Source: Lepidodermella squamata (lineage: Eukaryota; Animalia; Gastrotricha). Taken from it: a DNA stretch of 64,000 bases. The stretch is from NCBI GenBank assembly GCA_047495785.1, contig JBLDXI010000061.1:1-64000 (forward strand), in the 5' to 3' direction. The translations under genes were made by a program, and so were the position numbers. Under the pieces are notes generated by a model, which saw nothing but the letters and a program-made list of their open reading frames with translations, had not been told where the DNA came from and did no database searches. Every line of letters begins with the position of its first letter. The stretch's first letter is position 1. This document shows positions 1-64,000 of the stretch, piece by piece.

Positions 1-342
1 ACACATCTCGTGAGAGTGTGACTAATTTTCCCGAATTTTTGCATCATTCTAAATAATTCTAAAAAATATTTCATACCTTCAAAACCCGTAAAACGTTAAG
101 AGTTAAAAAATGAGAAAACTCCGAGTTTGAGTATTGTGAAATCACTTCTTTGTCTTAATTAATGACGCACATATTAATTAAACTTCATACTTACGCCCTC
201 GTGTAAAAGCGGCTAATATCTGCCCGCGTTCAAAAATTAGTCGGCCATTGTTCGCGGATTAAGTCAGACGGGCGACGGGCGGATTTTTTAAATAACCGCC
301 CGTCTGATTTTTGTCTTAACTCGAGCAACGGTCAACTCAGTG

Positions 343-4272: not shown

Positions 4273-5989
4273 CACTGAGTTGACCGTTGCTCGAGTTAAG
4301 ACAAAAATCAGACGGGCGGTTATTTAAAAAATCCGCCCGTCGCCCGTCTGACTTAATCCGCGAACAATGGCCGACTAATTTTTGAACGCGGGCAGATATT
4401 AGCCGCTTTTACACGAGGGCGTAAGTATGAAGTTTAATTAATATGTGCGTCATTAATTAAGACAAAGAAGTGATTTCACAATACTCAAACTCGGAGTTTT
4501 CTCATTTTTTAACTCTTAACGTTTTACGGGTTTTGAAGGTATGAAATATTTTTTAGAATTATTTAGAATGATGCAAAAATTCGGGAAAATTAGTCACTAT
4601 GCCTCTTGATGGCTTCTCCATCTCTCGGGAAAATAAATTGCCAATAATTGCAGTGATTTTGGTAGAAAAGTGAAAAATACCTACCTTTGATACAAAAAAA
4701 TGAGATTGATACAAATTTCTATTTTTTGAGCCATGAGCCATGTGATCAAATGTTCCATAAATAGCGCATACACCTTGAAAATGAGATGAATGACAAAGAA
4801 ATTTATTCAAACTAGTCAGTGAGGTTAGCACCAGAAGATTGCTGTGGCATTCGAAATTAAAAATTAAAAAAAAATTAGCAGCTTAATAAGACGCTTGTTC
4901 GGCCGGAAATAATCGATTTTTTCCGCGGGTTATCCACCTTAATTTCTTCAGCTTGGAACCACAGACCCAAAAATAATAAATTCAACTGATCATTCTCATT
5001 AACAAAATTCAAAGCCGAAATAGTAATCAAATCAGACAAATAATTCAATAATAATAATTTTCTTCGAGCAGGAAAGGGATCTTTTTATTTGGCTTAGCTG
5101 CGAATTCATGCTAGAAATTTATTTCAAATGCTGCGTCTAATCTCATGAAGCGATAAGGGGAGCCATGATCACTATAGCTGATAATATATTTGATTGATAT
5201 ATTAGGAATTGTTTTATAATTTTTGGGTCCAAATTTAGCGCTGCGGCCAACTTAATTATTTTAGTGACAAAAATGACAGAAATTTCTCACCGCCATTATC
5301 TTAATTTTCATGACTGTCAATACTTACGCAATATACCTTTAACACCTCAATAATTACCTCAAAAATTACCAAATTACCAATTACCAAAAATTACCAAAAA
5401 AATTAAAATTTAATGTGGCATTTTCATCTCTTGCGGCGATTGCGCAACACGTAATACTACTGTGTAGACTTAATTACTATGAACAGTCAGAAATACATAT
5501 GTGTTTGTAGTGTAAAAGCGGCTATTACTACAAGTGGGTAATAATACGCATTAGCAGGTCAAAATTTTCCATGTCGCAAATGCTAAAACATAGTACGAAT
5601 TGCATGTACACGGGAGCTTTTTCATAGGAGGATTGAAACCGGTGAAAGACGACTGATGACGCCATGTCGCGAGAGTCAGCATGTCATCCGATGTTGTGCG
5701 GCATCGAGTGGCGACACTGCACAGAGCACATTTTTAACTGGCACACCCTAATCCTTCTGTGAATGGGATTCATTTCTTAACGCTCCCTATTGATGCTTTT
5801 TGACGACCGACGGCCCGACAGAACACGACAGACACAACCCGCGACAACGGAGCTCCCCGTCACCAACGATTAAATAGTATAAAATACATGTAATCGTTCT
5901 TATTTCACGCCTTCCTAACAGCAAACGAATTTTTATTATTCATAATTGCACCAGGGTTTGCAAAAGATGATATTTTCGTATAAGTATAC

Positions 5990-14250: not shown

Positions 14251-15840
14251 CAATGTCTCAACAAAGTCAACTCGGACTTTGAATTCGCGTTTCTCGGTGC
14301 GTTGCTTTATTCAGAGATGTTGACAGCAAAAAGTAATTTTTCGAGCCCTAAAATATCGGATAATCGAAATAAAATTTGATTAAAATTTCCTGACCCCCGA
14401 CCAGCCGTTGATTGCAACGAGCATTGAGAGTTAGGGAAATCGGATCCTTTACCTTCTACGTCTATGTCATCATAACGAGGTCGAAAACGGGGCGCAAGCA
14501 CTGGGAGAGCGGCACCGAGCCCATCGAAGCTGTAAACCTTTTCAGCTGCAAAGGCCAATATGCGCAGGAAGAAAGTTGGTATTCCAGATTCCAGTTGTTG
14601 GTATTCGAACCATCCGGCTTCGAATGCGACATCTGAGATGTTTTCAGCTAAATATCTTCATATTGCTCTTGTTAATAATTTCTTTCCGGTACCGATTGTG
14701 TTTCAAGTAGTAACTTAATCTTTTACCCGCGTGCTGATTGGTCAATTTATCGTTGCTATGACTCCGGGATGAAACAATTAAGTCGTGCGATCCACTAATA
14801 AATTAGTTTATATTCATACAAAAATGACCTTGAAAATATACATTTTAGCTTACAATTCTACGGTCCGGAGAAAATGAAAAACTCCAAAGGCAGCGCAATT
14901 AATTTCTAAATTTAGTAATAGTATTGTGCAATTCATGACTGATCCCGTAGGGGCGGCAACCTTAATAGAACTTACCGCAGTCTATGAATTTGGGTTTCTT
15001 TAGTCGACCTTCTCGGAACAGTTCGGGGAACAGCAGCTATTAGACTGAATATCGATACACAAACCAAATCTGTTATGCGAAGCACTCTCGGATTTTTTAT
15101 TATAATTCTTTGAGGCTTATATAGCCAAGAGGACGCCAAATTAGAGAAGTTATAATGATGTGTGTCACGTGATATTGCTGTCACGAGCGCTAGCTAACAT
15201 TGAGAATGAACTAATGATAATAATTGGGACAGGTAACATAGCGATCATCTCAATGGCCGTGGTTATTAGCCGTAAAGGTTCAGCAGAAAAGATTAAGGCG
15301 GGGAAATTCGGTACAAGACGAACACCGATAATCAATCATAAGATTATCTTGACTTTCCTCTATGAATTCCTATTGCTTGAAACCGCAAAAAACATTATGC
15401 TACTGCTATAGCTACGAAATTAAAAAGCTACAAAATATTAAAATAAAATTTTTAAACGGATGTGTCAAATTCGAATTTTAAGCTGATTGGGTAATTTTGG
15501 CCCGCATGGAACTACGATGGGCTCGGCATTGTCGTTGCTTGGTTCATCCCTTGGGTTCATCCCAGGTCTACGCAATGGTGAATGAGGAGCAGTTAACAGG
15601 CACCGAATTGCAGCCTATGCTGACTACAATTCACCTGCCTGAAAAAAACATCAACAGCACATGTAGCAAACACGTATTAGCCATCGCCTTTATACTCATA
15701 TACAAGCGTAGGAGCATAAACGCGTATATGCCAATATGCCAGAATCTGCTTTCTACATATAAAAGTGAACAAAAACACATAGTAGACGTATAGCTCAAGG
15801 CATTGGCATCTACTGCTATTATGGTGCTATGAAAGCCAGA

Positions 15841-18800
15841 ATGGTGCAGAGATTTGAATCGTTTGCAGAGTTCACCAAAATCAAACGCTTGGGCAGTGGC
15901 GCTTTTGGATCAGTTTGGCATTGCCAAGCTAAAGACGATTTCGCGGACTACGCTGTTAAGGTGGTAAATCTCAGCGCGACTCGACGCAAGTACCGACAAA
16001 ATCCGGATATGGCTGAGAGCTACGTCAAATTAGGCCGCACTGAGGTTTTTAGTCAGCGATATTTTCAATACTGATCTTACTGATTCTGCCCAACAGCATG
16101 TCAAACTGCTAAGTTTGAGGCACGCCAACATAGTGTCATTTTACGATGCTTTTGAAGGTTGGGTAAAACTCTAATTGTAAATTTTAATATGAAGTACGTT
16201 CTACCAATTTTTTCCAGAACCTTTGGTTGAACTAGATGATTCAAACCAACATGACTGGCATCTGGACGATGAGATGTACTACCTCGTCATGGAGTTTTGT
16301 CCCGGCGGAGATTTAGAAGAATACATAAAACGAACTAATGAGGCAAATGCGAAAATTCCAGAAGATTTGCTTCGCGAGTGGGCTGGGCAACTTGTTTCGG
16401 CAATAAATTGTCTGCATAAATGTTTCGCGCTCCATCGCGATATCAAGCCGAAGAATATTTTCCTCACAGCCGATGGTAAAACAGTCAAGCTGGGCGATTT
16501 TGGATTCGCCAAAATCTACCAAGGGTTAGCCTTTTCTACTGTGGTGCACATCTAACGCTCTTCTGTTTCAGATCGAGTAGCACTACAACTCTGGGCCTCG
16601 GAACCCCTATCTACGCCGCGCCTGAAATTTTTAACAATGAGCAGCACTCGCCGGCCAGTGATTGGTGGTCTCTTGGAGTCACGCTGTTTGAGCTAGCTAA
16701 TTTCCGCCTACCTGTAAATGATTATATATTTAAAGGTTTTGTCATGAAGTTACTTTGTTTCGTCTTGCAGTTCAAAACAACATACGAGATCATTTTGTAA
16801 GTTCAAGACCTTTTACTCCTTGTCCAAATGTCTGCTAGAACCATGGCTAAACATACAATGCGTTTCAGAATTATGTGCCTAGTACAGTGCTCCCTCGATA
16901 TAAGCAAGGGGGCGGGGTCCACGCGATTGCTCTTATCGAGGGTTGCTCTTATAGAGGGCTGTTAAAGAGCTAGCAATGAATCATAAGTGCGTCGCCAGGT
17001 TTTTTTCTCAGTTGCTAGGGCGACGTTGATTTTACTGGTTAGCCATATCCAAGATAATCTGGTGTAGATTAATTCAATGATTTTAGATGTGGTCGATAGT
17101 ATTATTTGATATGCAAAGTTTGGTCATTTGAATTCCAATCATTTTAAGCTGGCTGAAAATTTTTCAAAATTTTCCAAACCATTTCTGAAACATATTTCAT
17201 TGAATAATTCCTTCATTTATGATCATGACCATTCGGATGTGTGAATGTACCCAGCCATATTTGATAGCCATTAATTATCTGAATTTAATTTATTTGATCC
17301 AATTCTGAAATTTGAAGGTTAACAAAGCTTAAAAGCCTTCATTTGTATTCAATGTAGCAATTAAATTTGATTCAAAGACAAACCATGAATCCACTAGCAG
17401 ATAAGCGAACAATTTTTGGTAAAATTCGGCTAGAAGGCTGTGATGCCCACAACCCATCCAAAGTTGAAATTAATCTTTTCTCATAAATCCGTGACAAAAA
17501 AAACTGAAGGAGTCGGAGGCGAACCTTGCTTGGGAATCCTGTCCAAAGTTTGCTTGAATCTTCAGTCGAAGATGCATCCTTACTTTATTTTTTCAGAATT
17601 CTATTTCAGAAATTCTAATGAATTAACACAGATTCACGGCAATTCCTCGTGATGTGTTTTTGATGGAATCGAAAAAGCTTGAATGCCACCTTCATCTGCT
17701 CTCAGCACTGCAGTCAAACATTAGATAATTAGCGGTGTGCTTTTTATCGCTCATTTCAATCATTTTTCCTGACACGTAATCACTACCATTCTCTAAATCA
17801 TCTCATCAATTACTAGTAGTATTGTTTGTGAATGAAAAAATACGAGAGACCAAACGCGCGCGCACGATCTCAATCTTGAAGTGCTGAGATAAAAAACATC
17901 GATCTGTAAAGATCAAAGATGAAGAGATCACGGCGCGCCGCTGTCAAACTCAAAAATTGGAAACGCCAGGAGCAGCGTTACAATTTTGTTGCTAACGTAA
18001 ACAAATTTTTCACGTAAATTAAAAATTATCATGTAAAAAATTTTAATTTGTCGAAAAATAATTTTTCAACAAATAAAATTAACGGAATTCAAAAAAAGTT
18101 GCTAGTAGCGAGGGATTGCTCTTATCGGGGTTGCTTATATCGAGGGAGCACTGTACTTCCTTGTTTGTGTATTTTTTTTCTTATGTTGTGAATATTCACA
18201 CATTCACAAAGCTGTTGCTATCATTATTACCAGGTCACCAATGCGCATATAAGCAAAACGTGGAGAATGGAGCGATTTTTGCGATAATATCGCGAGGACT
18301 AACTCTCTTGACCAGCCAATGCATTCATATGAGAGCTAGAAGCCACAATCCGAATCAGCAATTAATATTAGGTTTCAATTAAGTTAATTACCATCTTTTA
18401 AAATTAATTTAAAACCGCTTAAATTGAAAGTAAGCACTCCCATATCCCACAGCTGATTAAGTTGATTTTATGGAATAAAAAAGAAATCACCTATGGTTCC
18501 TACATCTCCTCATTCATTTCTCGAAATTGCAAGAACATTTTAATTTCATGATGAAATATCGCATTAAAAATTAGTTAAATTAAATGCTCACTGACATTCT
18601 TATTCGCATCACTTTCTTAATGAAGAAGAAAAAAATGCTAATGAGCCCCCCGCTAAACATCGTTAAGGGATAGCAATGATGCCATTTTTATGAGGCTGCA
18701 ATAAAAAAGGTATGTTCGTATTCCAGTGCGCGGAAACATAGAAGTGTCGGGCAGATAATTTTGAAACGCACGGTAGAAGTTTGCTCATTGATTTATGTCT

Positions 18801-20065
18801 CTCGTGTTCAGAGACTCGACGGAGCCAACATTTGACGATGATTGTCGATTGTCTCCAGAGTTTCGTGACTTCGTTTTATCCATGCTTCGGAAAGAGAAAC
18901 TACTACGAGCCACAGGAGATGATTTGCTCAAGAGACCCTTTTTGACGCTGAAACCGGGGGTCAGCATCGTAACTACAACCATTCCAACGCAAGATACCAA
19001 CGCTGTAATTGCTGCAAGAGAAGCTTTAGAGGCAAGTGCATAAGCAGTACACTGATCAATACTCTATATCTTTTTTTACAGTTGCTTTTCAAATACTCGA
19101 TGCAACGAACAATGTTGCCCGATATTGAAAAATTGCTGGAGGATCAGCGCTTAAATGTGGACGTGAATAGCCGAAACGATGACGGCTTCACGCCGCTGAT
19201 GATTGCAGCTCAAATGGGATTCCATGAATTTATGACGCCACTGGTGGTTAAGCATGGAGCCAACGTGGAATTGAGGGACAATTACGGCAAAACAGCAATT
19301 TACATGGCGGCTAAAAATGGGCACCACAAAGTAGTGGAAGTTCTTGCCAAAGCATTGGGCGCTAATGTTGAAGCAGCTAGTGATAGCGGAGCGACGCCTT
19401 TATTAGTCGCTGCTAAAAATGGCCACTTGGAAATTGTGAAGCTACTCGCTGGAGAGTTCAAAGCAGATGTGAATGCAGCGACGAATGATGGTGCTTCGCC
19501 ACTATTAGCTGCTGCTCATAAAGGCCACTTGGAAATTGTGAAGCTACTTGCTGGAGAGTTCAAAGCAGATGTGAATGCAGCAATGAAACATGGTGCTTCA
19601 CCGCTATTAGCTGCTGTTCATAAAGGCCACTTGGAAATTGTGAAGCTACTCGCTGGAGAGTTCAAAGCAGATGTGAATGCAACGATGAATGATGGTGATT
19701 CACCGCTATATATCGCTGCTCGAAAAGGCCACTTGGAAATTGTGAAGCTACTCGCTGGAGAGTTCAAAGCAGATGTGAATGCCGCGACGAAAGAGGGTGT
19801 TTCACCGCTATATATCGCAGCTCAAAATGGCCACTCGGAAATTGTAAAAGTTTTAGTTTATGAATTCCATGCAGATGTTTGGTCAGATGATGGGTCGTCG
19901 TTGGTGCTCGCATCCGAAAAGGGTTATCGCCGCGTTATTGAATCTTTATTGAAGGTGCCTGACATAAAAGTTGATTCCGAAATGCATGTAATGGGAGTTT
20001 CGGCTCTATCACCAGTCTATCATCCTATTTCGAAAAATATACAAAAAACGAATAATTTACATTAG
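15841..20065 (+). CDS. NEK-like Ser/Thr kinase-ankyrin repeat protein, copy K1 (8 ANK plus a truncated cap; possibly decaying)
   Basis: GSGAFGSV, AVK, HRDIKPKN, DFG, GTPIYAAPE and SDWWSLG motifs over six exons. Intron 5 (16797-18811) is enlarged by TEs. Ankyrin exon 19082-20065. Homology to K2 stops at ~20011. Confidence 0.8.
16856..18773. mobile_element. Tc1/mariner-type non-autonomous element in K1 intron 5
   Basis: Imperfect ~24-bp TIR CAATGCGTTTCAGAATTATGTGCC / CCGTGCGTTTCAAAATTATCTGCC. TA duplicated. The empty site ACATAGAAGT is seen in K2 (43291-43300). Confidence 0.8.
16885..18153. mobile_element. Nested pogo/Tigger-like element
   Basis: Perfect 23-bp TIR CAGTGCTCCCTCGATATAAGCAA, TA TSD, subterminal TTGCTCTTAT repeats. 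Confidence 0.88.
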
Positions 20066-24864: not shown

Positions 24865-25245
24865 GTTTTATTTTTCCTCTTCGAAACTGAGCGTCGTTCT
24901 TTAATCTTTACCCTTATTTTTTATCATTGGTTTTCTTTTTCCAGCGAATTTCCTTAGTAAGACCTACTTTAATTTGGTTTCTATGCACTCCGTTGATCCA
25001 TCTGGCTCGAGGTCTACCCCTGGGTGCGAACCACCCAATCAGAGGCCTCCAAATATATATTTTGTGTATTAGTCCTTCTACATCGATTTTCGAATTCTAA
25101 GACATTTTTAGATCTTGTTTTTACTTTTTCTAACTTTGAAACTATAAAAAATGTACCGAAGAAAACCCGGAAAACCCAGACTCATTCTAATATCTCAACC
25201 AAATATCCCCAGACTCATTCGATCCCTTTAACAAGTGACATACTT

Positions 25246-25583
25246 CATTGTGTGACCACTTAAAAGTCCAATCTAATGCGCACGTTGATTGGTCAATCGA
25301 TCGTTGCTATGACTCCCGGATGAAACGTTCTGTCGTGCGATCCATAAGATTTTTTGCAACAAGTGTTTTTTTCCGCAGCAATTTACCACAATTTATATGG
25401 AGTTTACGCTCGTTGTCAATGGAAACCGGGCAGAGGGTGTGGCAAGGTCATTTTTGTCATAAATATAAAATAATTTATTAGTGGATCGCACGACGGAAAT
25501 GTTTCATTTCGGAGTCATTAGCAACGATAAATTGACCAATCAGCGCGCGCGCCAAGGTTCAACTTACCAGTGGTTCCACAATG
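25246..25583. mobile_element. MITE with CA...TG ends and apparent 2-bp TSD (CMC-like); inverted copy at 45370-45708, older partial copy at ~14695-14830
   Basis: TIR CATTGTG(TG/GA)ACCACT plus long internal IRs. Flanks are TT/TT here and AT/AT in the second copy. Confidence 0.8.
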
Positions 25584-26251
25584 TTGATTATTCTTCTCGT
25601 GACTTTTGTATTTTTTCTGATTTTTTCTTGCCATCAGATTTAAGAGTTCTGAATTCTCATCTCTATACTTATGGGACGCGCTGTAGCTTCATTTCATGTC
25701 CTCCGTTCAATCAGCTAGCTAGTAATTTATAACTGTTGATAGCTAAGTGAATGAGGGCGACTTTATAGATAATTTCGGCGACAGGCGAGCAGACCTGTTA
25801 CTTGCAAACTGTTAATCGCACAAGAGTCCTCTGTCGAATGGATGTAACCCCGTAGAAAAAGTCCTCGAATTTACGAAATTGCAGGCCAAAAACTTTAATC
25901 ATAATTTATTTGACACTCATGCATGTTTTAAATAAAAGATGCGCGCATACACACACAAAAGTTCTTGTCTCAAGAAAAAAACGTGCGCATGCAGATCATT
26001 ACGTTATTATTTTATTTTTTATAAGCTTCGCCCGAGGTAGGTAGATTTTTCGGTAAGCTGTAATAATAATGAAGATATTGACAGCGCCAACTATCGTGGA
26101 AGCTTCCAATTAAATTTGCCACACAAGTACTAGAACTGGCAGAGAGAAAGCGATGCATCCATCTACATTAGCTGAAGCTAACTACTTGGTGTACAGTGGG
26201 TGTTTTCATTATCACTGACGTCTTTGTTTTCGAGAATATCATTTCCACAAA

Positions 26252-33909: not shown

Positions 33910-36315
33910 ATGTCAATTTCGCTAATAATTTTGATACTCGCCTCCTCTCTCGTTGTTAACGGCGAGCTTTCGAAATTGAGAATAGCCAATTTTATGCCAT
34001 TTACTGGGTTGGAACCCAACCAGTACCAAACATGCAAGGTTATGGCTGAACTAGTCATAGGGTTGGTCAACAATCGCAGCGACATTCTACCAAATTACAA
34101 AATCGAGCCTCAATTCATTGATGACAACAACGGACCAATGTTAGTTCGCCGTTTTCTCGAATTCGACAACCAGTTTAATGGGAACAAACTCGGTGAGAAT
34201 ACCTTCAAAGCTCCTGTTGTTGTTGGCCCAGTTAATTCTTGCGAGATGATAGCTTCGTTTGTTAACAAGCTTGGATATGTTGAGATTGCTCAATGCGCAT
34301 CAGATGGATTGAACAACCGAGCCCGTTTCTCGAATTTGTACCTAATTCGACCTTTAGCAGCTCAAGCTTGGATATCTAGACTTCGTTTCATCGTCGATAT
34401 TGGGAAATGGAGCTACTTCGCGCTGATTGTCAACGCGAACCAAGAGTATTCCGGGGCTAAACTCATGCAGAGGCTGGCGATTCTAAACGGTGTTCAAGTC
34501 TATCTCAACGCAGTCCCGGAATTCGATGACGACGCGGCCTTGGCCTTGAAGAAATCTGAAGCCCGCATAATCGCTCTTTATGCTGCGGGTTCGATGAATT
34601 ATCAAGTCCTGTGTCGATGTTTCAATCTCGGAATGACTGGTCCGAGGTACGTTTTCATCCTATCCGGGAGCTCATTTGCAGATCCAAGGACTTTGCCAGC
34701 TGTAATCTACCCTGGATGTACAAGGGAGATGATTTTCACTCAGAGCCTCTACTCAATCATGGTTATGTCTCAAAGCATAACAGACGAGCCTTTCGTCAAG
34801 TCTGAGTTGGGCTTCAACCTGTTTGAAATGGATAAAATGTTGGATTTATACATGAATAACTCGCGGCTTCCCGATTACGGGAACCGATACATATGCCATG
34901 ATGCTACCCTTCAAAGCCTGCTATTGCTGAATCGGACGGAATATCGACTGGAAAGGATCGGGTTGAGCTTGCAGAATATCACCACTCACCCTGATTTGAT
35001 TTCTAGAATAATTAATGAGTCGGCGGTGCGAATGAGTTACGTAGGCCTGAGAAAGAGCGGCCCGAGCTTTTACAGCCAGGATAGGGGTGAGATGATGGGC
35101 TCGAAATGGCCTGTGCTTCAATGGAACCCAACCGATGGCCTGAGGACTATTTGGATGGTAGTTCAGTCCGAAACCAACGATTCCTGCAACGAACTCGCAA
35201 TGTATTCAACTTATAGCGTTCTCAAATCGAAATGGCCAACATTGGATGGGAAACCGCCATCGGACAGAGCTAAGATAAAACATGAAGTTCAGGAAGTTCA
35301 CCTCGCGCTAAAAATCTCTATTTTCGTGCTAAGTGCAGGCTTAATCACGGTTAAATTCGGTATTTTTATAATAATTTCGCGCTACAAATCTCCAGACAAG
35401 TTCAGACGGATGCCATTTCTCTCGACATTGCAAATCGCTTTCCTTTGCCTCGCCGATATCTCAGCCATCATTTTCGCATCGGATGTTGATGAATCACGAA
35501 GTATAGCAACCCACGTAGCTAGAGTTTTGACCCTCATGATCGGTCTAAGCCTATCGAACTTCTGCATGATTTTCCGGACAATGGCTACATGTTCATTAGT
35601 GGCTAATATCAAGCAGAAGGCTGTAAAGGAGCGGGTTAAAACAAGCCCCAAAAAGTCAAACCCGAGCCTTGGGAGAGCTAGTAGTGGTACTTTGGTCACT
35701 TTTCCCCAACTCAGTAACGACGACTTTTTTGCGAAAAAATTAAGCCAAAGAAAGTTCGTGCAACTCCAGAAGATATGTGCGCTGTTAACAGGGATAGGAT
35801 TTGCTATTCTAGCTGCTTATGGAGCGATTTGGGAAAGTGTTGCCCCTACCAAGTGTGAAGGCATCACAATAACGCCTAGCCCGGTATATTTCGACGAAAT
35901 CGATACTTACATATTCACCTCAGCCGTAAATTGTCACGGGGATTCTCAAGATATTTGGTCTCTTGTGATTCTCGGGGTTAATGTAGTGCTACTAGTTATC
36001 GGATGCTACTATGCCAGAAAAATGACTCGAGATACAAGGTTCATTTTGCACCATTGGGACTTCACGTATTTGCTCTATGGGATGACGAATTGTATCATAA
36101 CTATGTTAGCTTCCTGTCTGGTTTTGCTGGCTGTTCCCAAGAATCCGGTAACGATCAGGATTGTCGTGGCATTTTCTGCGATTTGGATATCAGCTACAAC
36201 ATCAGCTATTTGTTACTTGCCGTATCGAAGGAAACCAGCTCCAGTCAGTGGCGTAGCTGGCCTTTCGCGGATAGGAGGACCTGTGTCTCGGAATTTAAAC
36301 CAGCCAAGAACGTGA
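33910..36315 (+). CDS. Intronless class C GPCR, GABA-B-receptor-like (801 aa)
   Basis: Signal peptide, Venus-flytrap-like ectodomain (VNNRSDILPNYKI, LGMTGPRYVFIL, W...GKPPSD), no Cys-rich linker, seven hydrophobic segments ending CYLPY. Confidence 0.88.
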   Translation: MSISLIILILASSLVVNGELSKLRIANFMPFTGLEPNQYQTCKVMAELVIGLVNNRSDILPNYKIEPQFIDDNNGPMLVRRFLEFDNQFNGNKLGENTFKAPVVVGPVNSCEMIASFVNKLGYVEIAQCASDGLNNRARFSNLYLIRPLAAQAWISRLRFIVDIGKWSYFALIVNANQEYSGAKLMQRLAILNGVQVYLNAVPEFDDDAALALKKSEARIIALYAAGSMNYQVLCRCFNLGMTGPRYVFILSGSSFADPRTLPAVIYPGCTREMIFTQSLYSIMVMSQSITDEPFVKSELGFNLFEMDKMLDLYMNNSRLPDYGNRYICHDATLQSLLLLNRTEYRLERIGLSLQNITTHPDLISRIINESAVRMSYVGLRKSGPSFYSQDRGEMMGSKWPVLQWNPTDGLRTIWMVVQSETNDSCNELAMYSTYSVLKSKWPTLDGKPPSDRAKIKHEVQEVHLALKISIFVLSAGLITVKFGIFIIISRYKSPDKFRRMPFLSTLQIAFLCLADISAIIFASDVDESRSIATHVARVLTLMIGLSLSNFCMIFRTMATCSLVANIKQKAVKERVKTSPKKSNPSLGRASSGTLVTFPQLSNDDFFAKKLSQRKFVQLQKICALLTGIGFAILAAYGAIWESVAPTKCEGITITPSPVYFDEIDTYIFTSAVNCHGDSQDIWSLVILGVNVVLLVIGCYYARKMTRDTRFILHHWDFTYLLYGMTNCIITMLASCLVLLAVPKNPVTIRIVVAFSAIWISATTSAICYLPYRRKPAPVSGVAGLSRIGGPVSRNLNQPRT

Positions 36316-42216: not shown

Positions 42217-42281
42217 TGATCAATTCTGAACGAGTCTCCATTCTCGCTGCTCTGCTAGATTCGCAGTTTTTCTCGACCAGA

Positions 42282-45165
42282 ATGGTGCAGAGATTTGAAT
42301 CGTTTGCAGAGTTCACCAAAATCAAACGCTTGGGCAGTGGCGCTTTTGGATCAGTTTGGCATTGCCAAGCTAAAGACGATTTCGCGGACTACGCTGTTAA
42401 GGTGGTAAATCTCAGCGCGACTCGACGCAAGTATCAACAAGATCCGAATATGGCTGAGAGCTACGTCAAATTAGGCCGCACTGAGGTTTTTAGTCAGCGC
42501 TATTTTCAATACTGATCTTATTGATTCTGCCCAACAGCATGTCAAACTGCTAAGTTTGAGGCACGCCAACATAGTGTCATTTTACGATGCTTTTGAAGGT
42601 TGGGTAAAACTCTATTTGTAAATTGTAATATAAAGTACATTCTACCAATTTTATCTAGAACTTTTGGTTGAACTAGATGATTCAAACCAACATGACTGGC
42701 ATCGGGACGATGAGATGTACTACCTCGTCATGGAATTTTGTCCCGGCGGAGATTTAGAAGAATACATAAAACGAACTAATGAGGCAAATGCGAAAATTCC
42801 AGAAGAATTGCTTCACGAGTGGGCGCGGCAACTTGTTTCGGCAATAAATTGTCTGCATAAATGTTCCGCGCTCCATCGCGATATCAAGCCGAAGAATATT
42901 TTCCTCTCAGCCGATGGAAAAACAATTAAGCTGGGTGATTTTGGATTCGCCAAAATCTACCAAGGGTTTGCCTTTTCTACTGTGGTGCACGGCTGACGCT
43001 CTTCGATTTCAGAACGAGTAGCGCTACAACTCTGGGACTCGGGACCCCTATCTACGCCGCGCCTGAAATTTTTAACAATGAGCAGCACTCGCCAGCCAGT
43101 GATTGGTGGTCTCTTGGAGTCACGCTGTTTGAGCTAGCTAATTTTCGGCTGCCTGTAAATAATTATATATTCAAAGGTTTTTTCATAAGCTGCTTCTTTA
43201 CGTCTTGCAGTTCAAAACAACATACGAGATCATTTTGTAAGTTCAAGACATTTTGCTCCTTGTCCAAATGTCTGCTAGAACCTTGGCTAAACATAGAAGT
43301 TTGCTCATTGATTTATGTCTCTCGTGTTCAGAGACTCAACGGAGCCACAATTTGACGATGATCGTCGATTTTCTCCAGAGTTTCATGACTTCGTTTTATC
43401 TATGCTTCGGAAAAAGAAAGATCTACGAGCCACAGGAGATGATTTGCTCAAGAAACCCTTTTTGACGCTGAAACCGGGGGCCAGCATCGTAACTATTCCA
43501 ACGCAGGATACCAACGCTGCAATCGATGCAAGAGAAGCTTTAGAGGCAAGCACATAAGCAGTACACTTATCAATACTCTATATCATTGTTTTACAGTTGC
43601 TTTTTAGTTACTCGAGGCAACGAGCAATGTTGCCCGATATCGAAAAATTGCTGGAGAATCAGCGCTTAAATGTGGACGTGAACAGCCGGAACGATGAAGA
43701 CCTCACGCCGCTGATGATTGCAGCTCTAAGTGGATTCGATGAATTTATGACGCCACTGGTGGTTAAGCATGGAGCCGACGTTGAATTGAGGGACAATTAC
43801 GGCAGAACAGCAATTTACATGGCAGCTAAAGATGGGCACCACAAAGTTGTGGAAGTTCTTGCTAAATCATTGGGCGCAAATGTTGAAGCAGCTGATAACA
43901 GCGGGGCAACGCCTTTATCAGTCGCTGCCGAGAATGGCCGCTTCGAAACAGTTAATCTCCTTTCGGGAGAGTTCAAAGTCGATGTGAATGCAGCGAGTAG
44001 TGATGGTGTTTCACCGCTGTGGAGGGCTGCTCAGAATGGCCACATCGAAATCGTGAAGATACTCGTTAGAGAGTTCAATGCCAAAGTAAATGCAGCGAGG
44101 AATGATGGTGTTACACCGTTCTGGATTGCTGCTTATTATGGCCACATCGAAATCGTGAAGCTACTCGCTGGTGAGTTCAAAGCAGATGTGAATGTAGCGA
44201 GGAAGAATGATGTCACACCGCTGTGGGTCGCTGCTCAGAATGGCCACAACGAAATCGTGAAGCTAATCGCTGGAGACTTCAAAGCAGATGTGAATATAGC
44301 GAGAAAGGATGGTGTTACACCACTGTGGGTCGCTGCTCAGAATGGCCACAACGAAATCGTGAAGCTACTCGCTGGAGAGTTCAAAGCAGATGTGAATATA
44401 GCGAGAAAGGATGGTGTTACACCACTGTGGGTCGCTGCTCAGAATGGCCACACCGAAATCGTGAAGCTTCTCGCTGGAGAGTTCAAAGCAGATGTGAATG
44501 CAGCGATGAATGATGGTGCCACGCCGATACATTTCGCTGCTCAGAATGGCCACATCGAAATCGTGAAGCTAATCGCTGGGGAGTTTAAAGCTGATGTGAA
44601 TGTAGCGATGAATGATGGTATTACACCGCTACATATCGCTGCTCATAAAGGCCACATCGAAATCGTGAAGCTACTCGCTGGAGAGTTTAAAGCTGATGTG
44701 AATGTAGCGAAGAATTATGGTGCTACACCGCTATTCATTGCTGCTCAGAATGGCCATTTGGAAATCGTGAAGCTACTCGCAGGAGAGTTCAAAGCCGATG
44801 TGAATGCACCGGCGAAAAATGGTGTTTCTCCGCTGTTTATCGCTGCTCGGAATGGCCACGTGGAGATTGTAAATATGCTGGTTCATGTATTTCATGCAGA
44901 TGTTAACAAGGCGGCAGAAGATGGTTGGTCGCCGTTGATGGTCGCTGCCAAAAATGGTTGTCACTGTGTTGTTGAATCTTTATTGAAGATGCCTGACATA
45001 AAAGTTAATGCCAAAATGCGTTTAACGCGGATTTCGGCTCTATCAGCAGCCATGAATAGTAAGGGAGTGGCTATTGAAGCTAAGCAAAGATGCATCGAAC
45101 TGTTGCTGAGGGCTGGAGCTGAGCCACCGGGAATGTTTGAAAGCTTCATTCATTCTTTTATGTGA
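42282..45165 (+). CDS. NEK-like Ser/Thr kinase-ankyrin repeat protein, copy K2 (full length, ~840 aa, 13 ANK + cap)
   Basis: Exons 42282-42485, 42538-42598, 42659-42965, 43013-43154, 43211-43236, 43332-43545 and 43597-45165 sum to 2523 nt in frame, assuming a GC-AG last intron. All catalytic motifs are intact. Confidence 0.88.
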
Positions 45166-45369
45166 TTTTCAATCAGAACTCAAATAAAATTAAAATGAGC
45201 CGCGGCAAGTGAAAACCGTAGCTTACGCACTTGTGAGAAATGTTCGCAAGAGCGCGAAGAAAGCTTGATAGGTGAATATTGTCAAAATCGACAATCGATC
45301 CATGATTTACTAGGGCAGTTTTATATGAGGAATCTGGCGGTGCAATCCTTTCCTTTCTTTGCGATGCAT

Positions 45370-45708
45370 CATTGTGGAACCACTGGTAAGTTGAACCTTC
45401 GCGCGCACGCTGATTGGTCAATTTATCGTTGCTAATGACTCCGGAATGAAACATTTTCGTCGTGCGATCCACTAATAAATTATTTTATATTTATGTAAAA
45501 AATGACCTTGCCACACCCTCTGCCCGGTTTGACATTGACCACGAGCGTAAACTCCATATTAATCGTGGTAAATTGCTGTGGCAAAAAACACTTGTTGCAA
45601 AAAATGTTATGGATCGCACGACAGAACGTTTCATCCGGGAGTCATAGCAACGATCGATTGACCAATCAGCGTGCGCATTGGATTGGACTTTTAAGTGGTC
45701 ACACAATG
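45370..45708. mobile_element. MITE, inverted copy of 25246-25583
   Basis: Reverse-complement match to 25246-25583, with AT/AT flanks. Confidence 0.8.
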
Positions 45709-46125
45709 ATAGTTTTTATGCTATGACCTAAAAATGCGAGTGCGTCAAAGCATGAAATTCACGCACTTTTCCTAGTTTTTGTGGTGAATTTGGGGCGCGC
45801 GTAAACAATTTTCCCATTGCATTTTTCGAGCGAGAATCCTATATTTTTAGACATAAAAACCGCCCATAAATTCGAAACTTGACCTTTGACGAAACTTGAC
45901 GAATTCAGCTGACTTCAAATAAAACTTATAAATTCGCATATTTATTGCGATTTTTCCATTAAACTTTGAAATCAATGGAGTTTTTGATGATATATACCGG
46001 CATTACTAAGAATAGTGTTAGGTTTCTATAGCTTTGATAACCACTGAGTTTGTCACAAAATGGAAAATTGCTGCTAAAATTATGGTTCGTTTGAAATGTT
46101 CAGAAGACTGTTTGTATGTGATGAC

Positions 46126-56271: not shown

Positions 56272-56997
56272 TTAGAATTCACGATGACATCGCTTTTGAT
56301 CACGAAGTATATGGACCCAATACGCCAAACCAGCCATAATCACCATAACAGCGACAAACACTGAAACGATGCCAATAATCATGAAAATCACAAGTTTTGG
56401 GGTATCTTCCTTATCATTCTTAATTGCATTTTGATTCGAAGTTTGCTGATCGAATCGTTCGCCGAGCACTGCGGCCCTTAAAGGCTGCGTTGTTTCGAAA
56501 TATTCTGTTTGTGTAGCAATACTAGTCGTTGATGAAGCAGTTGTAGTAGAAGCCAACGAGGTTTCAATTTCAGGCCGTTCTGTGGTAGTTGGACGTTTTG
56601 TGGTTGTTGTTGGACGTTCTGTGGTTGCTGTTGGAAGTTCTGTGGTTGTTGTTGGACGTTCTGTGGTTGTTGTTCGAAGTTCTGTGGTTGTTGTACGTTC
56701 TGTGGTTGTTGTTGGACGTTCTGTGGTTGTTGTTCGAAGTTCTGTGGTTGTTGTACGTTCTGTGGTTGTTGTTGGACGTTCTGTGATTGTGGGCCGTTCT
56801 GTGGTTGTTGTACGTTCTTTGGTTGTTGTTGGACGTTCTGTGGTTGTTGTACGTTCGGTGGTTGTTGATGTTGCTTGCGTCGTCGAAGAGGTTAATAACT
56901 GAGTACAGAATGTTTCTTCCAAAATGTCTTTTCCAGCTAGCAGCTGCTCGAGAGGAGCCATCATGGGTTTTGATTGATGATAAGAAATTGCGTTATC
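56272..56997 (-). CDS. Mucin-like single-pass membrane protein, terminal exon (TTTE(R/L)(P/R/T) repeats + TM helix)
   Basis: Thr-rich tandem repeats at 56580-56870, hydrophobic LVIFMIIGIVSVFVAVMVIMAGLAYWV and a short basic tail. In-frame acceptor TTAACAG at 57004-56998. Upstream exons were not identified. Confidence 0.7.
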   Translation of the reverse strand, partial: DNAISYHQSKPMMAPLEQLLAGKDILEETFCTQLLTSSTTQATSTTTERTTTTERPTTTKERTTTTERPTITERPTTTTERTTTTELRTTTTERPTTTTERTTTTELRTTTTERPTTTTELPTATTERPTTTTKRPTTTERPEIETSLASTTTASSTTSIATQTEYFETTQPLRAAVLGERFDQQTSNQNAIKNDKEDTPKLVIFMIIGIVSVFVAVMVIMAGLAYWVHILRDQKRCHREF

Positions 56998-59325: not shown

Positions 59326-62124
59326 TTTGTAATTTAAATCCAAAGTAAAAGCAATTAATTAATATACACCGCAGAATGGCTATGGTGGTTTTATTCAGTA
59401 TTCAAAATTGTTACCAACGCTCTAACATGAGAATTAATTAACCAACAACGATTCCACATCGCGCGGTGAGCGACAAAACTTGATTAGAATACCCTGAGCG
59501 ACAATTTCGGGCCTTTTAACTGCCTAAATCAAAAAAACTAAATATGCAAATTAGCGAGAGTTTCTCTGAGGACAGTTTTCTGCAGAAAGTGTAGTTTTTT
59601 GAGGAGCTGGGGCAGCAGAACCGCGGTGAGAGTTTCGTTGTGAGAAATGGTTCCTACTTCGCAAAAAACTTGCTCATCGCTAATAGAACTTTCACTTCTG
59701 GCCGTTAGCACTTCACTGCACTGCTTCAAAAAAGACAGTTTTTCGGAAATCCTTCAGGTTTCATTTTATTCATCAAAATTAAATCAATTGAAAAAATTGA
59801 AAAATTGTCAAGTTAATAATGGATACTGTTTCACGAAACGCCATGGTCGAACATCGGCTGTGACCGATGCAGAAAACCGCCACTGGAGCAGGCCCGAAGA
59901 ACCTGTAGAAATAAATTGAAATTAATAATTGAAATTAATTGAACACGAAAATACCTTGCTAGTTATTCATCGATACCGTTACGAATTGTTAGCCGACTGG
60001 TTAAGACTGGTTCGACAACAGAATCGATTCGCGGGGCAAACCTGGGCGAAAATTACAGTTAAATTAAAGAAAATGGAATTAATTTCAAAATTACCTTGAA
60101 AATTCGACAAATATCTGACTTGTCCAAATTGCATGGTCGACACACCTGGTAGCAAGGCGGCGGGGTTGATGGATACAATGCGAAATTGAGGCCGATAGAA
60201 AAATTCTTACTAAATAGGGCATGGGACATTGATGTTTTGAAATTGAAAACTAAAATAAGATGATTTGAATGAACCAAAAAGCTACATTTTTGAAGCATGG
60301 CGTGATTACGCAACACCCCGAGGCTTGTGTGCACAACAATCGAACGCCATAATAACAATGATTTTGCCCTATTTCAGCTTTTATTTAGAACGACAATTTT
60401 CAGTCATTAGAAATTTGGCTTTTACGAAATATCTAAATTATCGAATTTTGTTGGTATTCTTATATTTTTGATGTTCAGGCTGAAAACGATAAAAATTCGG
60501 TTATTTTCAGGATCCAGGTAAATAATTAGTAAAAATTAGGAAAAATTGGGAAAAAAACGAGAAATTTTATGATAAATAAAATAAGTTCGATCCAGAAAGG
60601 TAGAAAGCAGTTTTTCGACCCAAGGAATTTTCCGCGAAAAAACTAGAGGTCGAGGCATCGAATTTCGTTCACTTTCGTTCGCTTCTTCTCACTTCGCAGT
60701 GAAAATATAGAAATCGCAAGTTTTTTAACGGCGACGAATTAATATTTCACCTGCAGTTAACTTCGGGTCTCGGGTCGCAAAATGCCGAATTTCCCAAGTT
60801 TTATAAAAAAAACTGTGTCAATTTAGCGAAGTGACTGGTTTCCAGCTTTAACTTCCAGTTTTTTCCAAAAACTGCAGTAAGTTTCGAAAAAAGATGAAAA
60901 ATGACAGTTAACGGCGTTTTTAGGCAGTTTCCTGCAATTCCCACTGGAACTTGGCAGTATTTCGCAAAAAACGTGCACTTGCTGCTCAGGGTAGAAACAA
61001 ATGGCGTAGAATTAACCTTTTGCATTCCGGCATATCACTAGATACTAGAGAGCCAGTTTTTTGGACTGTGTAAGTAATGAAAATAAAATGGGTGTTAAAT
61101 TTATAGATTGCAGTTATTCAATGGACAATGGAAAATCACGAATTAGAGACCAAATCTGGTGAGAAAAATACAGAAGTTGGCCATATTATGGTCCGGCATT
61201 GAAACTGCTTGATTTTCGAAAGAAACAACAGTGAGAGAATAATTTTATTTTTCGAAATAATTCAACTTTTATTGTTCAAGCCTTCACCATAGCCGTAAAA
61301 GCGCTGGACAGCAAACTACCTCTCTGGCTCTATGCGCCACGGGATATGTCCAGTCAAAAGGGAGAAATTTCCTGATTCATGGCCGTGGAATAAAATTTGT
61401 AAACGGATGTGATCAAATTCGAATTGTAAGCTGATTGGGTAATTGTTGACCCTGGTCTATGTCTTGAAGTCAAAGAGACCACCAATCATACGCAACTCAA
61501 CGAATGGTTTTATTCATTGTATTAAATGCCTTATATACGATGCTCCAAGACAACGATATCAAAAGGTGAATAGATAGTCAATAGTTGAATGTCGTTGCTT
61601 GGTGCATCCCAGGTCTACATAATTTTGGCCCGCATGGCGATGGGCTCGGAATTGTCGTTGCTTGGTTCATCCCAGGTCTACGCAATGGTGAATAATGAGT
61701 AGCAGTTAACAGGCACCGAATTGCAGTCTTTGCTAACTACAATTCACCTGCCCAAAAAAACATCAACAGCACATTGTAGCAAACACGTATTAGCCATCGC
61801 CTTTATACTCATATACAAGCGTAGGAGCATAAACGCGTATATGCCAATATGCCAGAAACTGCTTTCTACATATTACTTGTGCTTAAAAGTGAACAAAAAC
61901 TCATATAAGGTGTACGAATAGCTACAAGGTATTGACATCTACTTCTGCTATTACGGTAATATATAAGTCAGTTTACCATTGTGCTACAACAGGTGAGATA
62001 ACATAACTCGATTGCTATATATATTTCTCTAAATATTTTCTAATATTGTTCAAGCTCATTGATCAATTCTGATCAAGTCTCCATTCTCGCTGCTCTGCTA
62101 GATTCGCAGTTTTGCTCGACTAGA

Positions 62125-64000
62125 ATGCTGCAGAGATTTGAATCGTTTGCAGAGTTCACCAAAATCAAACGCTTGGGCAGTGGCGCTTTTGGATCAGTTT
62201 GGCATTGCCAAGCTAAAGACGATTTCGCGGACTACGCTGTTAAGGTGGTAAATCTCAGCGCGACTCGACGCAAGTATCGACAAGATAAGTATCGACCGGA
62301 TATGGCTGAGAGCTACGTCAAGTTAGGCCGCACTGAGGTTTTTAGTCAGCGATATTGTCAATACTGATCTTATTGATTCTGCCTAACAGCATGTCAAACT
62401 GCTAAGTTTGAGGCACGCCAACATAGTGTCATGTTACGAGGCTTTTGAAGGTTAGGTAAAACTCTAATTGTAACTTCAACTCTAATATAAAGTAAATTCT
62501 ACCAATTTTTTCCAGAACCTTTGGTTGAACTAGATGATTCAAACCAACATGACTGGCATCTGGACGATGAGATGTACTACCTCGTCATGGAATTTTGTCC
62601 CGGCGGAGATTTAGAAGAATACATAAAACGAACTAATGAGGCAAATGCGAAAATTACAGAAGATTTGATTCGCGAGTGGGCTCGGCAACTTGTTTCTGCA
62701 ATAATGTGTCTGCATAAATGTTTCGCGCTCCATCGCGATATCAAGCCGAAGAATATTTTCCTCTCAGCCGATGGAAAAACAGTCAAGCTGGGTGATTTTG
62801 GATTCGCCAAAATCTACCAAGGGTTAGCCTTTTCTACTGTAGTGCACATCTAACGCTCTTCTGTTTTAGATCGAGTAGCACTACAACTCTGGGACTCGGG
62901 ACCCCTATCTACGCCGCGCCTGAAATTTTCAACAATAAGCAGCACTCGCCAGCCAGTGATTGGTGGTCTCTTGGAGTCACGCTGTTTGAGCTAGCTAATT
63001 TCCGCCTACCTGTAAATAATTATATATTTAAAGGTTTTGTCATGAAGTTACTTTGTTTCGTCTTGCAGTTCAAAACAACATTCGAGATCATTTTGTAAGT
63101 TCAAGACGTTTTACCGCTTGTCAACATTTCTTTTAGAAGTTAGAATGTCTGTTTGCTCATTGATTTATGTCTCTCGTGTTCAGAGACTCAACGGAGCCAC
63201 AATTTGACGATGATCGTCGATTTTCTCCAGAGTTTCATGACTTCGTTTTATCTATGCTTCGGAAAAAGAAAGATCTACGAGCCACAGGAGATGATTTGCT
63301 CAAGAAACCCTTTTTGACGCTGAAACCGGGGGCCAGCATCGTAACTATTCCAACGCAGGATACCAACGCTGTAATCGATGCAAGAGAAGCTTTAGAGGCA
63401 AGCGCATAAGCAGTACACTTATCAATACTCTATATCATTTTTTTACAGTTGCTTTTTAGTTACTCGAGGCAACGAGCAATGTTGCCCGATATTGAAAAAT
63501 TGCTGGAGGATCAGCGCTTAAATTTGAACGTGAACAGCCGGAACGATGAAGACCTCACGCCGCTGATGATTGCAGCTCAAAGTGGATACGATGAATTTAT
63601 GACGCCATTGGTGGTTAAGCATGGAGCCGACGTTGAATTGAGGGACAATTACGGGAGAACAGCAATTTACATGGCAGCTAAAGATGGGCACCACAAAGTT
63701 GTGGAAGTTCTTGCCAAAGCATTGGGCGCAAATGTTAACGCAGCTCGTAATAGCGGAGCGACGCCTTTATTAGTCGCTGCTAAAAATGGCCACTCGGAAA
63801 TTGTGAAGCTACTCGCTGGAGAGTTCAAAGCAGATGTGAATGCAGCAATGAATAATGGTGTTACACCGCTATTAGTCGCTGCTCGAAATGGCCACATCGA
63901 AATCGTGAAGCTACTCGCTGGAGAGCTCAAAGCAGATGTGAATGCAGCGATGAATGATTGTGTTTCACCGCTATATATCGCTGCTGAAAAAGGTCACACG
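62125..64000 (+). CDS. NEK-like Ser/Thr kinase-ankyrin repeat protein, copy K3 (runs off the window end)
   Basis: Same seven-exon layout with open frames. 3-aa insertion (KYR) in exon 1. Ankyrin exon starts at 63449. Confidence 0.85.

What the first reader, a model, noticed from the sequence alone, without database searches (positions are those of the whole stretch)
43597..45165. Kinase-ankyrin family with DARPin-like hypervariable, shuffling repeat arrays: candidate diversifying intracellular sensor
Seen: three paralogs (15841, 42282, 62125) have near-identical kinase exons. Each ends in one large exon of 102-bp (34-aa) ankyrin repeats, in genes otherwise split by many short introns. Repeat number differs (K1 8 + partial, K2 13 + cap, K3 >4). 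The framework GHxEIVKLLAGEFKADVN is almost invariant, while changes concentrate in xxxGx(T/S)PLxxAAxx (e.g. RKDGVTPLWVAAQN, MNDGITPLHIAAHK, RNDGVTPFWIAAYY, MKHGASPLLAAVHK, MNDGDSPLYIAARK). Two adjacent K2 repeats (44284-44385, 44386-44487) differ by only 2 nt. Repeats carry gene-specific codons (mostly TTG GAA ATT in K1, mostly ATC GAA ATC in K2). Established: the beta-turn and helix-1 positions form the ankyrin binding face randomised in DARPin libraries, and fungal NLRs such as Podospora het-e/HNWD diversify through highly conserved repeats that recombine. Inference: a NEK-like kinase, rather than the TKL kinase of RIPK4/ANKK1, is coupled to a recombining recognition array, possibly for innate immunity or allorecognition.
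Basis: partly seen in the sequence, partly recalled or inferred. Interest (0 to 1): 0.78.

Follow-up and report, generated by a model that had tools for sequence, protein, structure and literature searches.

The report
Kinase genes with unstable ankyrin arrays
Three neighbouring genes of a small invertebrate (probably a gastrotrich) join an active-looking protein kinase to a row of ankyrin repeats that gains and loses units, but I found no sign that the repeats are being driven to diversify, so an immune-sensor role remains a guess.

Summary
The window carries three paralogous seven-exon genes. Each has six short kinase exons and one large exon of 102-bp ankyrin units.

- **K2** (42282-45165) is intact: 840 codons, all catalytic motifs, 13 units plus a cap.
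- **K1** has an open frame, a roughly 1.9-kb transposon-like insertion in intron 5 and a replaced C-terminal cap.
- **K3** runs off the window. Further along the contig it has a 1-nt deletion, an in-frame stop and a truncated array.

The two adjacent K2 units differing by 2 nt and the gene-specific codons are both real. Unit number (7, 13, 15) and order differ between copies, and the paralogs are recombination mosaics (runs test p about 1e-5).

Variation does lean towards the ankyrin binding face (p = 0.02). There, however, dN/dS is about 1: 1.1-1.2 in the window and 0.6-1.0 in 312 units elsewhere in the genome. The framework gives 0.2-0.5. Diversifying selection is therefore not shown. Unit identity (70-78%) is below the 85% used for fungal receptor repeats.

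"NEK-like" is only moderately supported. No RNA evidence was reachable, but a GC-AG intron conserved in all eight paralogs examined supports the kinase-ankyrin junction.

The scan has already reported this family on other DNA of this genome. The closest published parallel is Giardia's Nek-ankyrin expansion.

The parts
42282..42485 (+). K2 exon 1: start codon, Gly-rich loop, beta-3 Lys, alpha-C Glu
   Evidence: Gene model and splice sites; Pkinase match
42538..42598 (+). K2 exon 2
   Evidence: GT-AG boundaries; frame kept
42659..42965 (+). K2 exon 3: kinase core with the HRD and DFG motifs
   Evidence: Pkinase E = 2e-23; best solved relatives are ULK3, NEK1, RAD53 and NEK7
43013..43154 (+). K2 exon 4: activation loop, APE motif, subdomain IX
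43211..43236 (+). K2 exon 5 (26 nt)
   Evidence: boundaries conserved in K1, K3 and K4
43332..43545 (+). K2 exon 6: end of the kinase domain plus linker
   Evidence: ends at a conserved GC donor
43546..43596 (+). K2 intron 6, a 51-nt GC-AG intron joining the kinase and ankyrin parts
   Evidence: The GCAAG donor, a phase-0 junction and a 50-60 nt intron are conserved in K1, K2, K3 and five distant paralogs. Coding conservation runs right up to both splice sites
43597..45165 (+). K2 exon 7: 13 ankyrin units of 34 codons plus a C-terminal cap, then the stop codon
   Evidence: Pfam Ank_2 E = 4e-111; unit table; AlphaFold2 pLDDT 83.6 with helix pairs every 34 residues
15841..20065 (+). K1: the same seven exons (15841-16044, 16097-16157, 16218-16524, 16572-16713, 16771-16796, 18812-19031, 19082-20065). 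The frame is open, with 7 units plus a degenerate eighth. The C-terminal cap is replaced after 20015
   Evidence: A near-identical twin (K4) lies 70,508 nt downstream on the contig
16854..18775 (.). Insertion of about 1.9 kb in K1 intron 5, with terminal inverted repeats and a nested element with perfect 27-nt inverted ends (16881-18157)
   Evidence: BLAST breakpoints at 16858 and 18774; inverted repeats I1 and I2
62125..64000 (+). K3: exons 62125-62337, 62390-62450, 62516-62822, 62870-63011, 63069-63094, 63184-63397, and the ankyrin exon from 63449, which runs off the window. On the contig it has 15 units, a 1-nt deletion near 64293, an in-frame TAG in unit 15 and an abrupt end at 65058

Best explanation
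These are members of a large, lineage-restricted family of soluble Ser/Thr protein kinases whose C-terminal ankyrin solenoid serves as the protein-binding or targeting module.

The family turns over by birth and death: tandem and segmental gene duplication, transposon hits and decay. The kinase halves are kept similar by gene conversion between paralogs. The ankyrin arrays grow, shrink and reorder by duplication and loss of whole 102-bp units (unequal crossing-over).

After a unit is copied, its framework stays under purifying selection. Its beta-turn, inner-helix and helix-2 N-cap residues drift at about the neutral rate. That drift produces the DARPin-like look.

Shown here: the gene structure, the intact catalytic motifs, the unit dynamics, the recombination mosaic and the split in selective constraint between sites. 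Inferred: that the array binds partners and so directs or regulates the kinase.
For: - **Gene model.** K2 is a coherent seven-exon, 840-codon model with all kinase motifs.
- **Splice sites.** They are conserved in four copies.
- **Constraint on the kinase part.** Exons are 95.6-97.1% identical against 87.6-91.7% for introns; kinase dN/dS is 0.40-0.69.
- **Kinase-ankyrin junction.** The GC-AG intron is conserved in 8 of 8 paralogs.
- **Array dynamics.** Units 1-2 are positional orthologues. Internal units include 1-2-nt twins, adjacent (K2 units 7/8, K3 units 9/10) or 3-7 units apart (K3 units 5/8/12), and unit counts are 7, 13 and 15. Codons are gene-specific.
- **Recombination mosaic.** 71 runs against 103 expected, p about 1e-5.
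- **Selection by site class.** Framework dN/dS is 0.13-0.28. Variable positions give about 1.1-1.2, not different from 1. Family-wide values are 0.6-1.0 against 0.4-0.5.
- **Family size.** At least 150 exon-3 matches and 170 ankyrin matches in the genome.
- **Published parallel.** In Giardia, Nek kinases carry 1-26 ankyrin repeats that are gained and lost, and deleting a repeat changes localisation (PMC3218828).
Against: - No transcript, ligand or localisation data exist for these genes. Two searches of the public protein collection found nothing close.
- A dN/dS near 1 at surface sites could also be a blend of positive and negative selection. The counting method is coarse and ignores recombination.
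- Within K2 alone, the a-priori sites gave 1.6, from non-independent pairs with few synonymous changes.
- Earlier scan notes on other loci report ratios of 3-5.
Confidence: 0.6

Rival explanations
1. One reading: a diversifying intracellular sensor. The ankyrin array is a recognition surface kept variable by recombination and positive selection. The kinase signals when non-self or a pathogen product is bound.
For: Variation is enriched at the six positions I recall as randomised in DARPins (p = 0.02). The outer helix is nearly invariant, while the beta-turn and inner helix vary. Arrays change length and order. The family is large and clustered. Fungal NLR ankyrin repeats show the same design (PMC4986451). 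Within-K2 pairs give dN/dS of 1.4-1.6 at variable sites.
Against: Independent nearest pairs give 1.14-1.20, not different from 1 (Fisher p = 0.55-0.72). The 312 family units give 0.58-1.01. The orthologous N-terminal units give 0.32-0.65. Internal identity is 70-78%, below 85%. Sub-unit recombination is equivocal. No NOD, death, TIR or other immune-type domain was seen in the exons scanned. There are no expression or population data.
Confidence: 0.17
2. The kinase and the ankyrin protein are two separate products of an operon-like pair. The kinase ends at the stop codon just after exon 6. The ankyrin ORF starts at the ATG at 43627, after spliced-leader trans-splicing at the acceptor at 43596.
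For: In K1-K3 an in-frame stop lies 3 codons past the proposed donor. The Met at codon 11 of the big exon is present in all eight paralogs (shifted one codon in one of them). Earlier scan notes report spliced-leader trans-splicing and operon-like gene runs in this genome; I did not test this.
Against: The ten codons between the acceptor and that Met are conserved as protein in paralogs whose intron sequence is no longer alignable. The rare GCAAG donor is conserved in 8 of 8. The position of the read-through stop is not conserved, lying 2 to 32 codons downstream. The two products could also coexist through intron retention.
Confidence: 0.08
3. The cluster is decaying duplicated DNA without present function. 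The repeat pattern is then just the residue of recent amplification.
For: K3 has a frameshift, a stop and a truncated array. K1 has a transposon in intron 5 and a lost cap. Surface sites evolve neutrally. Kinase dN/dS is fairly high, at 0.4-0.7.
Against: K2 is fully intact over 840 codons and 12 splice sites. Exons are better conserved than introns. Framework dN/dS is 0.13-0.28. The catalytic motifs are intact in all three copies.
Confidence: 0.08

Closest known systems
Giardia lamblia Nek-ankyrin kinases (Manning et al. 2011, PMC3218828)
   Same: An N-terminal kinase followed by a variable ankyrin array (1-26 repeats in Giardia). A very large family with recent duplicates and fast turnover. 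Repeats are gained and lost between relatives. No signal peptide or membrane span.
   Different: Giardia's repeats are divergent and carry a TALM motif, and 71% of its Neks are catalytically dead. Here the repeats are consensus-like with a TPL-type motif, and the three kinases look active. There is no evidence of common descent: the best outside matches to the kinase core are 50% identical or less. That paper states that the Nek-ankyrin association is seen in no other species.
Fungal NLR repeat domains with high internal conservation (het-e/HNWD WD40; ankyrin and TPR NLRs; Dyrka et al. 2014, PMC4986451)
   Same: Superstructure-forming repeats that are similar to each other, vary in number, exchange sequence, and vary mainly on the binding face.
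   Different: There is no NOD domain here. Unit identity is 70-78%, not 85% or more. Positive selection was not detected. Polymorphism between individuals was not tested.
Animal kinase-ankyrin proteins RIPK4/ANKK1, DAPK1, ILK and TNNI3K (from my own knowledge)
   Same: A protein kinase domain and an ankyrin array in one soluble polypeptide. In RIPK4, ANKK1 and DAPK1 the kinase is N-terminal.
   Different: Those are single, conserved genes with fixed arrays, and their kinases belong to the TKL or CAMK groups. Here the kinase core is closest to NEK and ULK kinases, and the family has well over 100 members.
Designed ankyrin repeat proteins (DARPins)
   Same: A consensus-like framework. DARPin chains are among the best solved-structure matches, after ankyrin-1/2 and NOMPC. 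Four of the eight most variable positions coincide with randomised DARPin positions (the list of randomised positions is from my own memory of the DARPin design).
   Different: The unit has 34 residues, not 33: one extra residue after helix 2. The H of the TPLH motif, its neighbour and the first residue of helix 2 also vary, whereas they are fixed in DARPins.

Membership tests
Eukaryotic protein kinase (Pkinase, PF00069), catalytically competent | Gly-rich loop, beta-3 Lys, alpha-C Glu, HRD...N, DFG, APE and the subdomain XI Arg are all present | tested here: met
   Pfam matches exon by exon. All motifs can be read in the spliced frame of K1, K2 and K3.
NEK (NIMA-related) kinase family | The kinase domain groups with NEKs rather than with other groups | tested here: inconclusive
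   K2 exon 3 scores ULK3 59 bits, NEK1 56, RAD53 56 and NEK7 54. Exon 1 gives weak, mixed hits. Exon 4 matches Greatwall, PKC and RSK. A 199-residue open stretch of a paralog (66% identical to K2 exon 3) scores NEK1 76, NEK2 71 and ULK3 68. No tree of the whole domain was made, because the joined sequence was not searched, by rule.
Ankyrin repeat array | Tandem units of about 33 residues matching the Ank profiles and folding as helix-turn-helix pairs | tested here: met
   Ank_2 E = 4e-111, with 12 Ank stretches. The AlphaFold2 model has pLDDT 83.6 and paired helices every 34 residues. Ankyrin-1 is the top solved-structure hit at E = 5e-125.
Hypervariable or diversifying repeat receptor (fungal HNWD/NLR type) | dN/dS above 1 at binding-face codons | tested here: not met
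   1.14-1.20 in the window (p = 0.55-0.72); 0.58-1.01 in 312 family units; 0.32-0.65 in the orthologous N-terminal units. This is a counting method only.
Hypervariable or diversifying repeat receptor (fungal HNWD/NLR type) | Internal repeat identity of 85% or more over at least 100 residues (PMC4986451) | tested here: not met
   Mean amino-acid identity between units is 0.70 (K1), 0.72-0.77 (K2) and 0.78 (K3).
Hypervariable or diversifying repeat receptor (fungal HNWD/NLR type) | Repeat-number polymorphism between individuals | not testable with these tools
   Only one assembly is available. Between paralogs the counts are 7, 13 and 15. The K1/K4 twins are identical across the array.
Hypervariable or diversifying repeat receptor (fungal HNWD/NLR type) | A NOD (NACHT or NB-ARC) domain between the effector and the repeats | tested here: not met
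   No such Pfam match in the scanned K2 exons 1, 3, 6 and 7. The unscanned exons 2, 4 and 5 are only 61, 142 and 26 nt, and the 840-codon model reads as kinase, short linker and ankyrin array.
Giardia Nek-ankyrin family | An N-terminal kinase plus a variable ankyrin array, in a large and dynamic family | tested here: met
   This is a likeness of design only.
Giardia Nek-ankyrin family | TALM-type ankyrin repeats and common descent | tested here: not met
   The units carry T/S-P-L followed by a variable residue. The best outside kinase matches are 50% identical or less, and none is a Giardia-like relative.
RIPK4/ANKK1 type (TKL kinase plus ankyrin) | A kinase of the TKL group | tested here: not met
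   Apart from one EGFR and one JAK-type tyrosine-kinase entry far down the list, the best 60 solved matches to exon 3 and to the longer paralog stretch are Ser/Thr kinases with NEK and ULK on top, and none is named as a TKL kinase.

The most novel reading that the evidence does not exclude
An animal counterpart of the fungal high-conservation-repeat receptors. It would be a family of more than 100 cytosolic kinases whose ankyrin arrays are reshuffled to create new binding specificities, serving as a kinase-coupled innate recognition repertoire in a phylum with no described immune receptors.
Probability: 0.15. Interest if true: 0.8.

Novelty: new variant of a known kind. Interest (0 to 1): 0.45.

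Why it matters
If the family is expressed, it is a second, independent case of a massive kinase-ankyrin expansion. The only published one I found is in Giardia, whose authors called the association unique. It would also be the first in an animal.

It offers a natural series of consensus-like ankyrin arrays of different lengths on one catalytic scaffold. That is useful for studying how repeat arrays are built and how they retarget an enzyme.

For the scan itself, this report adds a caution. The DARPin-like pattern can arise from unit duplication followed by relaxed constraint on surface residues, without any diversifying selection.

Tried and rejected
- **Outside relatives of the ankyrin exon.** The first 120 residues were searched against 5.8 billion proteins. 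Only generic ankyrin proteins at 50% identity or less came back (best-scoring hit 38%), and the best hit is not from this genome.
- **Short fragments.** The first 127 residues were searched as a short query to catch transcript fragments. Nothing was found, so expression could not be tested.
- **Kinase core.** Exon 3 was scored against 1.84 billion representatives. No relative was above 50% identity. The top scores came from multi-kinase proteins, and only 2 of 150 carry ankyrin repeats, both fused oomycete gene models.
- **Recombination inside the 102-bp unit (PHI test).** p = 0.03 at one window size and not significant at two others. I did not use it as support.
- **Duplicate pairs as a proxy for alleles.** K1/K4 show 3 mismatches in about 13 kb and none in the array. 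L025/L026 show 6 mismatches in 3 kb, spread evenly. Both pairs are too young to be informative.
- **Sequence after K1's array.** The ORF after the array has no Pfam match. K2's tail has no counterpart downstream of K1.
- **Joined protein left out.** Exons were searched by reference, one at a time.
- It held a typed site-pattern string. I did not resend it and recomputed the pattern from files instead.

Full report
**Setting.** The window is the first 64 kb of a 151.6-kb contig (C61) of a 121.2-Mb assembly in 151 contigs. Earlier notes of this scan call the organism a small-intron animal, probably the gastrotrich Lepidodermella squamata. I did not test that. The published assembly of that species is 122 Mb in 157 contigs, made from HiFi reads of amplified DNA, and the paper never mentions ankyrin or kinase (PMC11660948). 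The scan has already reported this kinase-ankyrin family several times on other DNA of the same genome. I treated those notes as leads only.

**Observation.**
- TRF finds 102-bp arrays in three places, and Pfam confirms ankyrin repeats and kinase fragments.
- I built the K2 model from the sequence. It has seven exons, six introns of 47-95 nt, 2,520 coding nt and 840 codons with no internal stop.
- Five introns are GT-AG. The last, between the kinase and ankyrin parts, is GC-AG (43546-43596).
- The same boundaries exist in K1, K3 and a fourth copy, K4, further along the contig.
- All catalytic motifs are present in K1, K2 and K3. There is no signal peptide-like start; the protein begins directly with the kinase domain.
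- The big exon of K2 divides into 14 units of 34 codons.

**State of the three copies.**
- **K2** is intact.
- **K1** has an open frame. Its intron 5 is 2,015 nt instead of 95, because of an insertion bounded by inverted repeats with a nested element. Its similarity to K2 stops at 20015, so the last 38 or so codons of the cap are replaced by 17 unrelated codons and a stop, followed by an (ATT)27 run.
- **K4** is K1's twin. It lies inside a 35-kb segmental duplication (98.5-99.5% identical), within which about 13 kb including the gene are nearly identical: three mismatches in all, one in the gene and none in the ankyrin exon.
- **K3** continues beyond the window. It has 15 units, a 1-nt deletion in a run of A near contig position 64293, an in-frame TAG in unit 15, and an array that breaks off at 65058 into unrelated sequence. 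It is probably a pseudogene.

**Is the kinase really fused to the array?** No RNA evidence was reachable. The comparative evidence is good. In K1, K2, K3 and five distant paralogs (39-58% identical in exon 6), exon 6 ends in phase 0 at a GCAAG donor. An intron of 50-60 nt with otherwise unalignable sequence follows and ends in AG. Protein-level conservation resumes at the very first codon after the acceptor, ten codons (nine in one paralog) before the first Met. The stop reached by reading through the donor lies 2 to 32 codons downstream, so it is not conserved. This favours cis-splicing and a fused protein. A separate, trans-spliced ankyrin product, or a kinase-only isoform made by intron retention, cannot be excluded.

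**How the arrays evolve.**
- Units 1 and 2 are positional orthologues in all copies (3-12 differences per 102 nt). Unit 3 is orthologous between K1 and K3.
- Internal units are not positional orthologues. K3 units 5, 8 and 12 differ by 2 nt; K3 units 9 and 10 by 1 nt; K2 units 7 and 8 by 2 nt. K1 units find their nearest relatives scattered through K3.
- Unit counts are 7, 13 and 15, although the kinase parts differ by only dS 0.04-0.09. Whole-unit duplication and loss has therefore continued after the genes separated.
- Across the kinase exons, the introns and the first three units, the pattern of which two copies agree switches in blocks: 71 runs against 103 expected. This shows gene conversion or recombination between paralogs.
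- Recombination inside single units is not established.

**Is the variation directed?** I mapped the unit onto the 33-residue DARPin consensus, working from my own knowledge of that design. This fixes an a-priori set of six positions: unit codons 6, 8, 9, 11, 19 and 20, counting from the Ala that follows the extra residue.
- These six hold more entropy than random sets of six (p = 0.02).
- The other strongly variable codons are 7, 15, 16 and 23. In the model, codons 13-19 form the inner helix and 23-32 the outer helix. The variable sites therefore lie in the turn, the inner helix and the first residue of the outer helix, while the rest of the outer helix is almost invariant.
- The rates do not show positive selection. 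In ten independent nearest pairs, dN/dS against pooled synonymous change is 1.14 at the a-priori sites, 1.20 at the post-hoc variable sites and 0.28 in the framework. Neither of the first two differs from 1.
- All-pairs values within genes scatter from 0.4 to 1.6.
- In 312 further 34-codon units from 26 other loci of the family, the a-priori sites give 0.58-1.01 and the framework 0.38-0.49.
- The orthologous N-terminal units give 0.32-0.65.
- Synonymous divergence between units of one gene is 0.2-0.25, so most units are not very young. Mean amino-acid identity between units is 70-78%, under the 85% criterion used for fungal receptor repeats.

The simplest reading is a constrained framework plus a nearly unconstrained surface after each unit duplication. 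This disagrees with one earlier scan note that reported three- to five-fold excess on other loci. My method is a counting one and ignores recombination, so a proper site-model analysis remains worthwhile.

**Kinase class.** Searches were done exon by exon, as the rules require. Exon 3 matches ULK3, NEK1, RAD53 and NEK7 within 5 bits of each other. Exon 1 gives weak, mixed hits. Exon 4 prefers AGC-type kinases. A 199-residue open stretch of a paralog puts NEK1 and NEK2 first. The kinase does not look TKL-like; "NEK-like" is a reasonable but unproven label.

**Outside relatives.** None is close. The best matches to the kinase core are 50% identical or less. Only two of the best 150 have ankyrin repeats, and both are long fused gene models from the oomycete Achlya.

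**Comparison and verdict.** In design, the family works like Giardia's Nek-ankyrin kinases, whose arrays are thought to set localisation or partners. It also resembles fungal receptor repeats in its array dynamics, but it fails their criteria for identity and selection and lacks a NOD domain. I therefore file it as a new variant of a known kind: a lineage-specific kinase-ankyrin expansion with unstable arrays. The sensor hypothesis stays open at roughly one chance in six.

Noticed in passing
window 18-2035 and 2580-4597; also C61:74772-76789: A perfect (100%) 2,018-bp inverted repeat at the very start of the contig, with a 544-bp spacer and a third copy further along. The published assembly that this genome resembles was made from multiple-displacement-amplified DNA, which is known to create inverted chimeras. 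It may therefore be an artefact, or it may be a mobile element.
   Followed up: no
window 2023-36733 versus C61:74215-108049: A segmental duplication of about 35 kb at 98.5-99.8% identity. It includes a 13-kb core with only three mismatches that contains K1/K4. It is either a very recent duplication or an assembly duplicate.
   Followed up: partly
window 33910-36315 (+): A single-exon 801-codon ORF with an ANF_receptor ligand-binding domain and a weak class C seven-helix match. It looks like a class C GPCR-like gene inside the duplicated block.
   Followed up: no
window 45367-45710; copies at 25245-25586 and 14710-14832: A roughly 343-bp element just downstream of K2 that matches its own reverse complement and recurs in the window. 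It looks like a miniature inverted-repeat element.
   Followed up: no
window 56588-56867, inside a minus-strand ORF at 56272-56964: A 21-nt tandem repeat of 14 copies (also readable with periods of 39 and 60) within a 230-codon ORF that has no Pfam match.
   Followed up: no
window 42279-42281, 15838-15840, 62122-62124: An AG dinucleotide lies one base upstream of the conserved start ATG in K1, K2 and K3. This would fit a trans-splice acceptor if the species uses spliced leaders, as earlier scan notes claim.
   Followed up: no
L002, L003, L007, L008, L015 (other contigs) and window 43546-43596: All eight family members examined use a GC-AG intron, not GT-AG, at the kinase-ankyrin junction. That is a rare donor type, strictly conserved here, and it might allow regulated intron retention.
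   Followed up: partly
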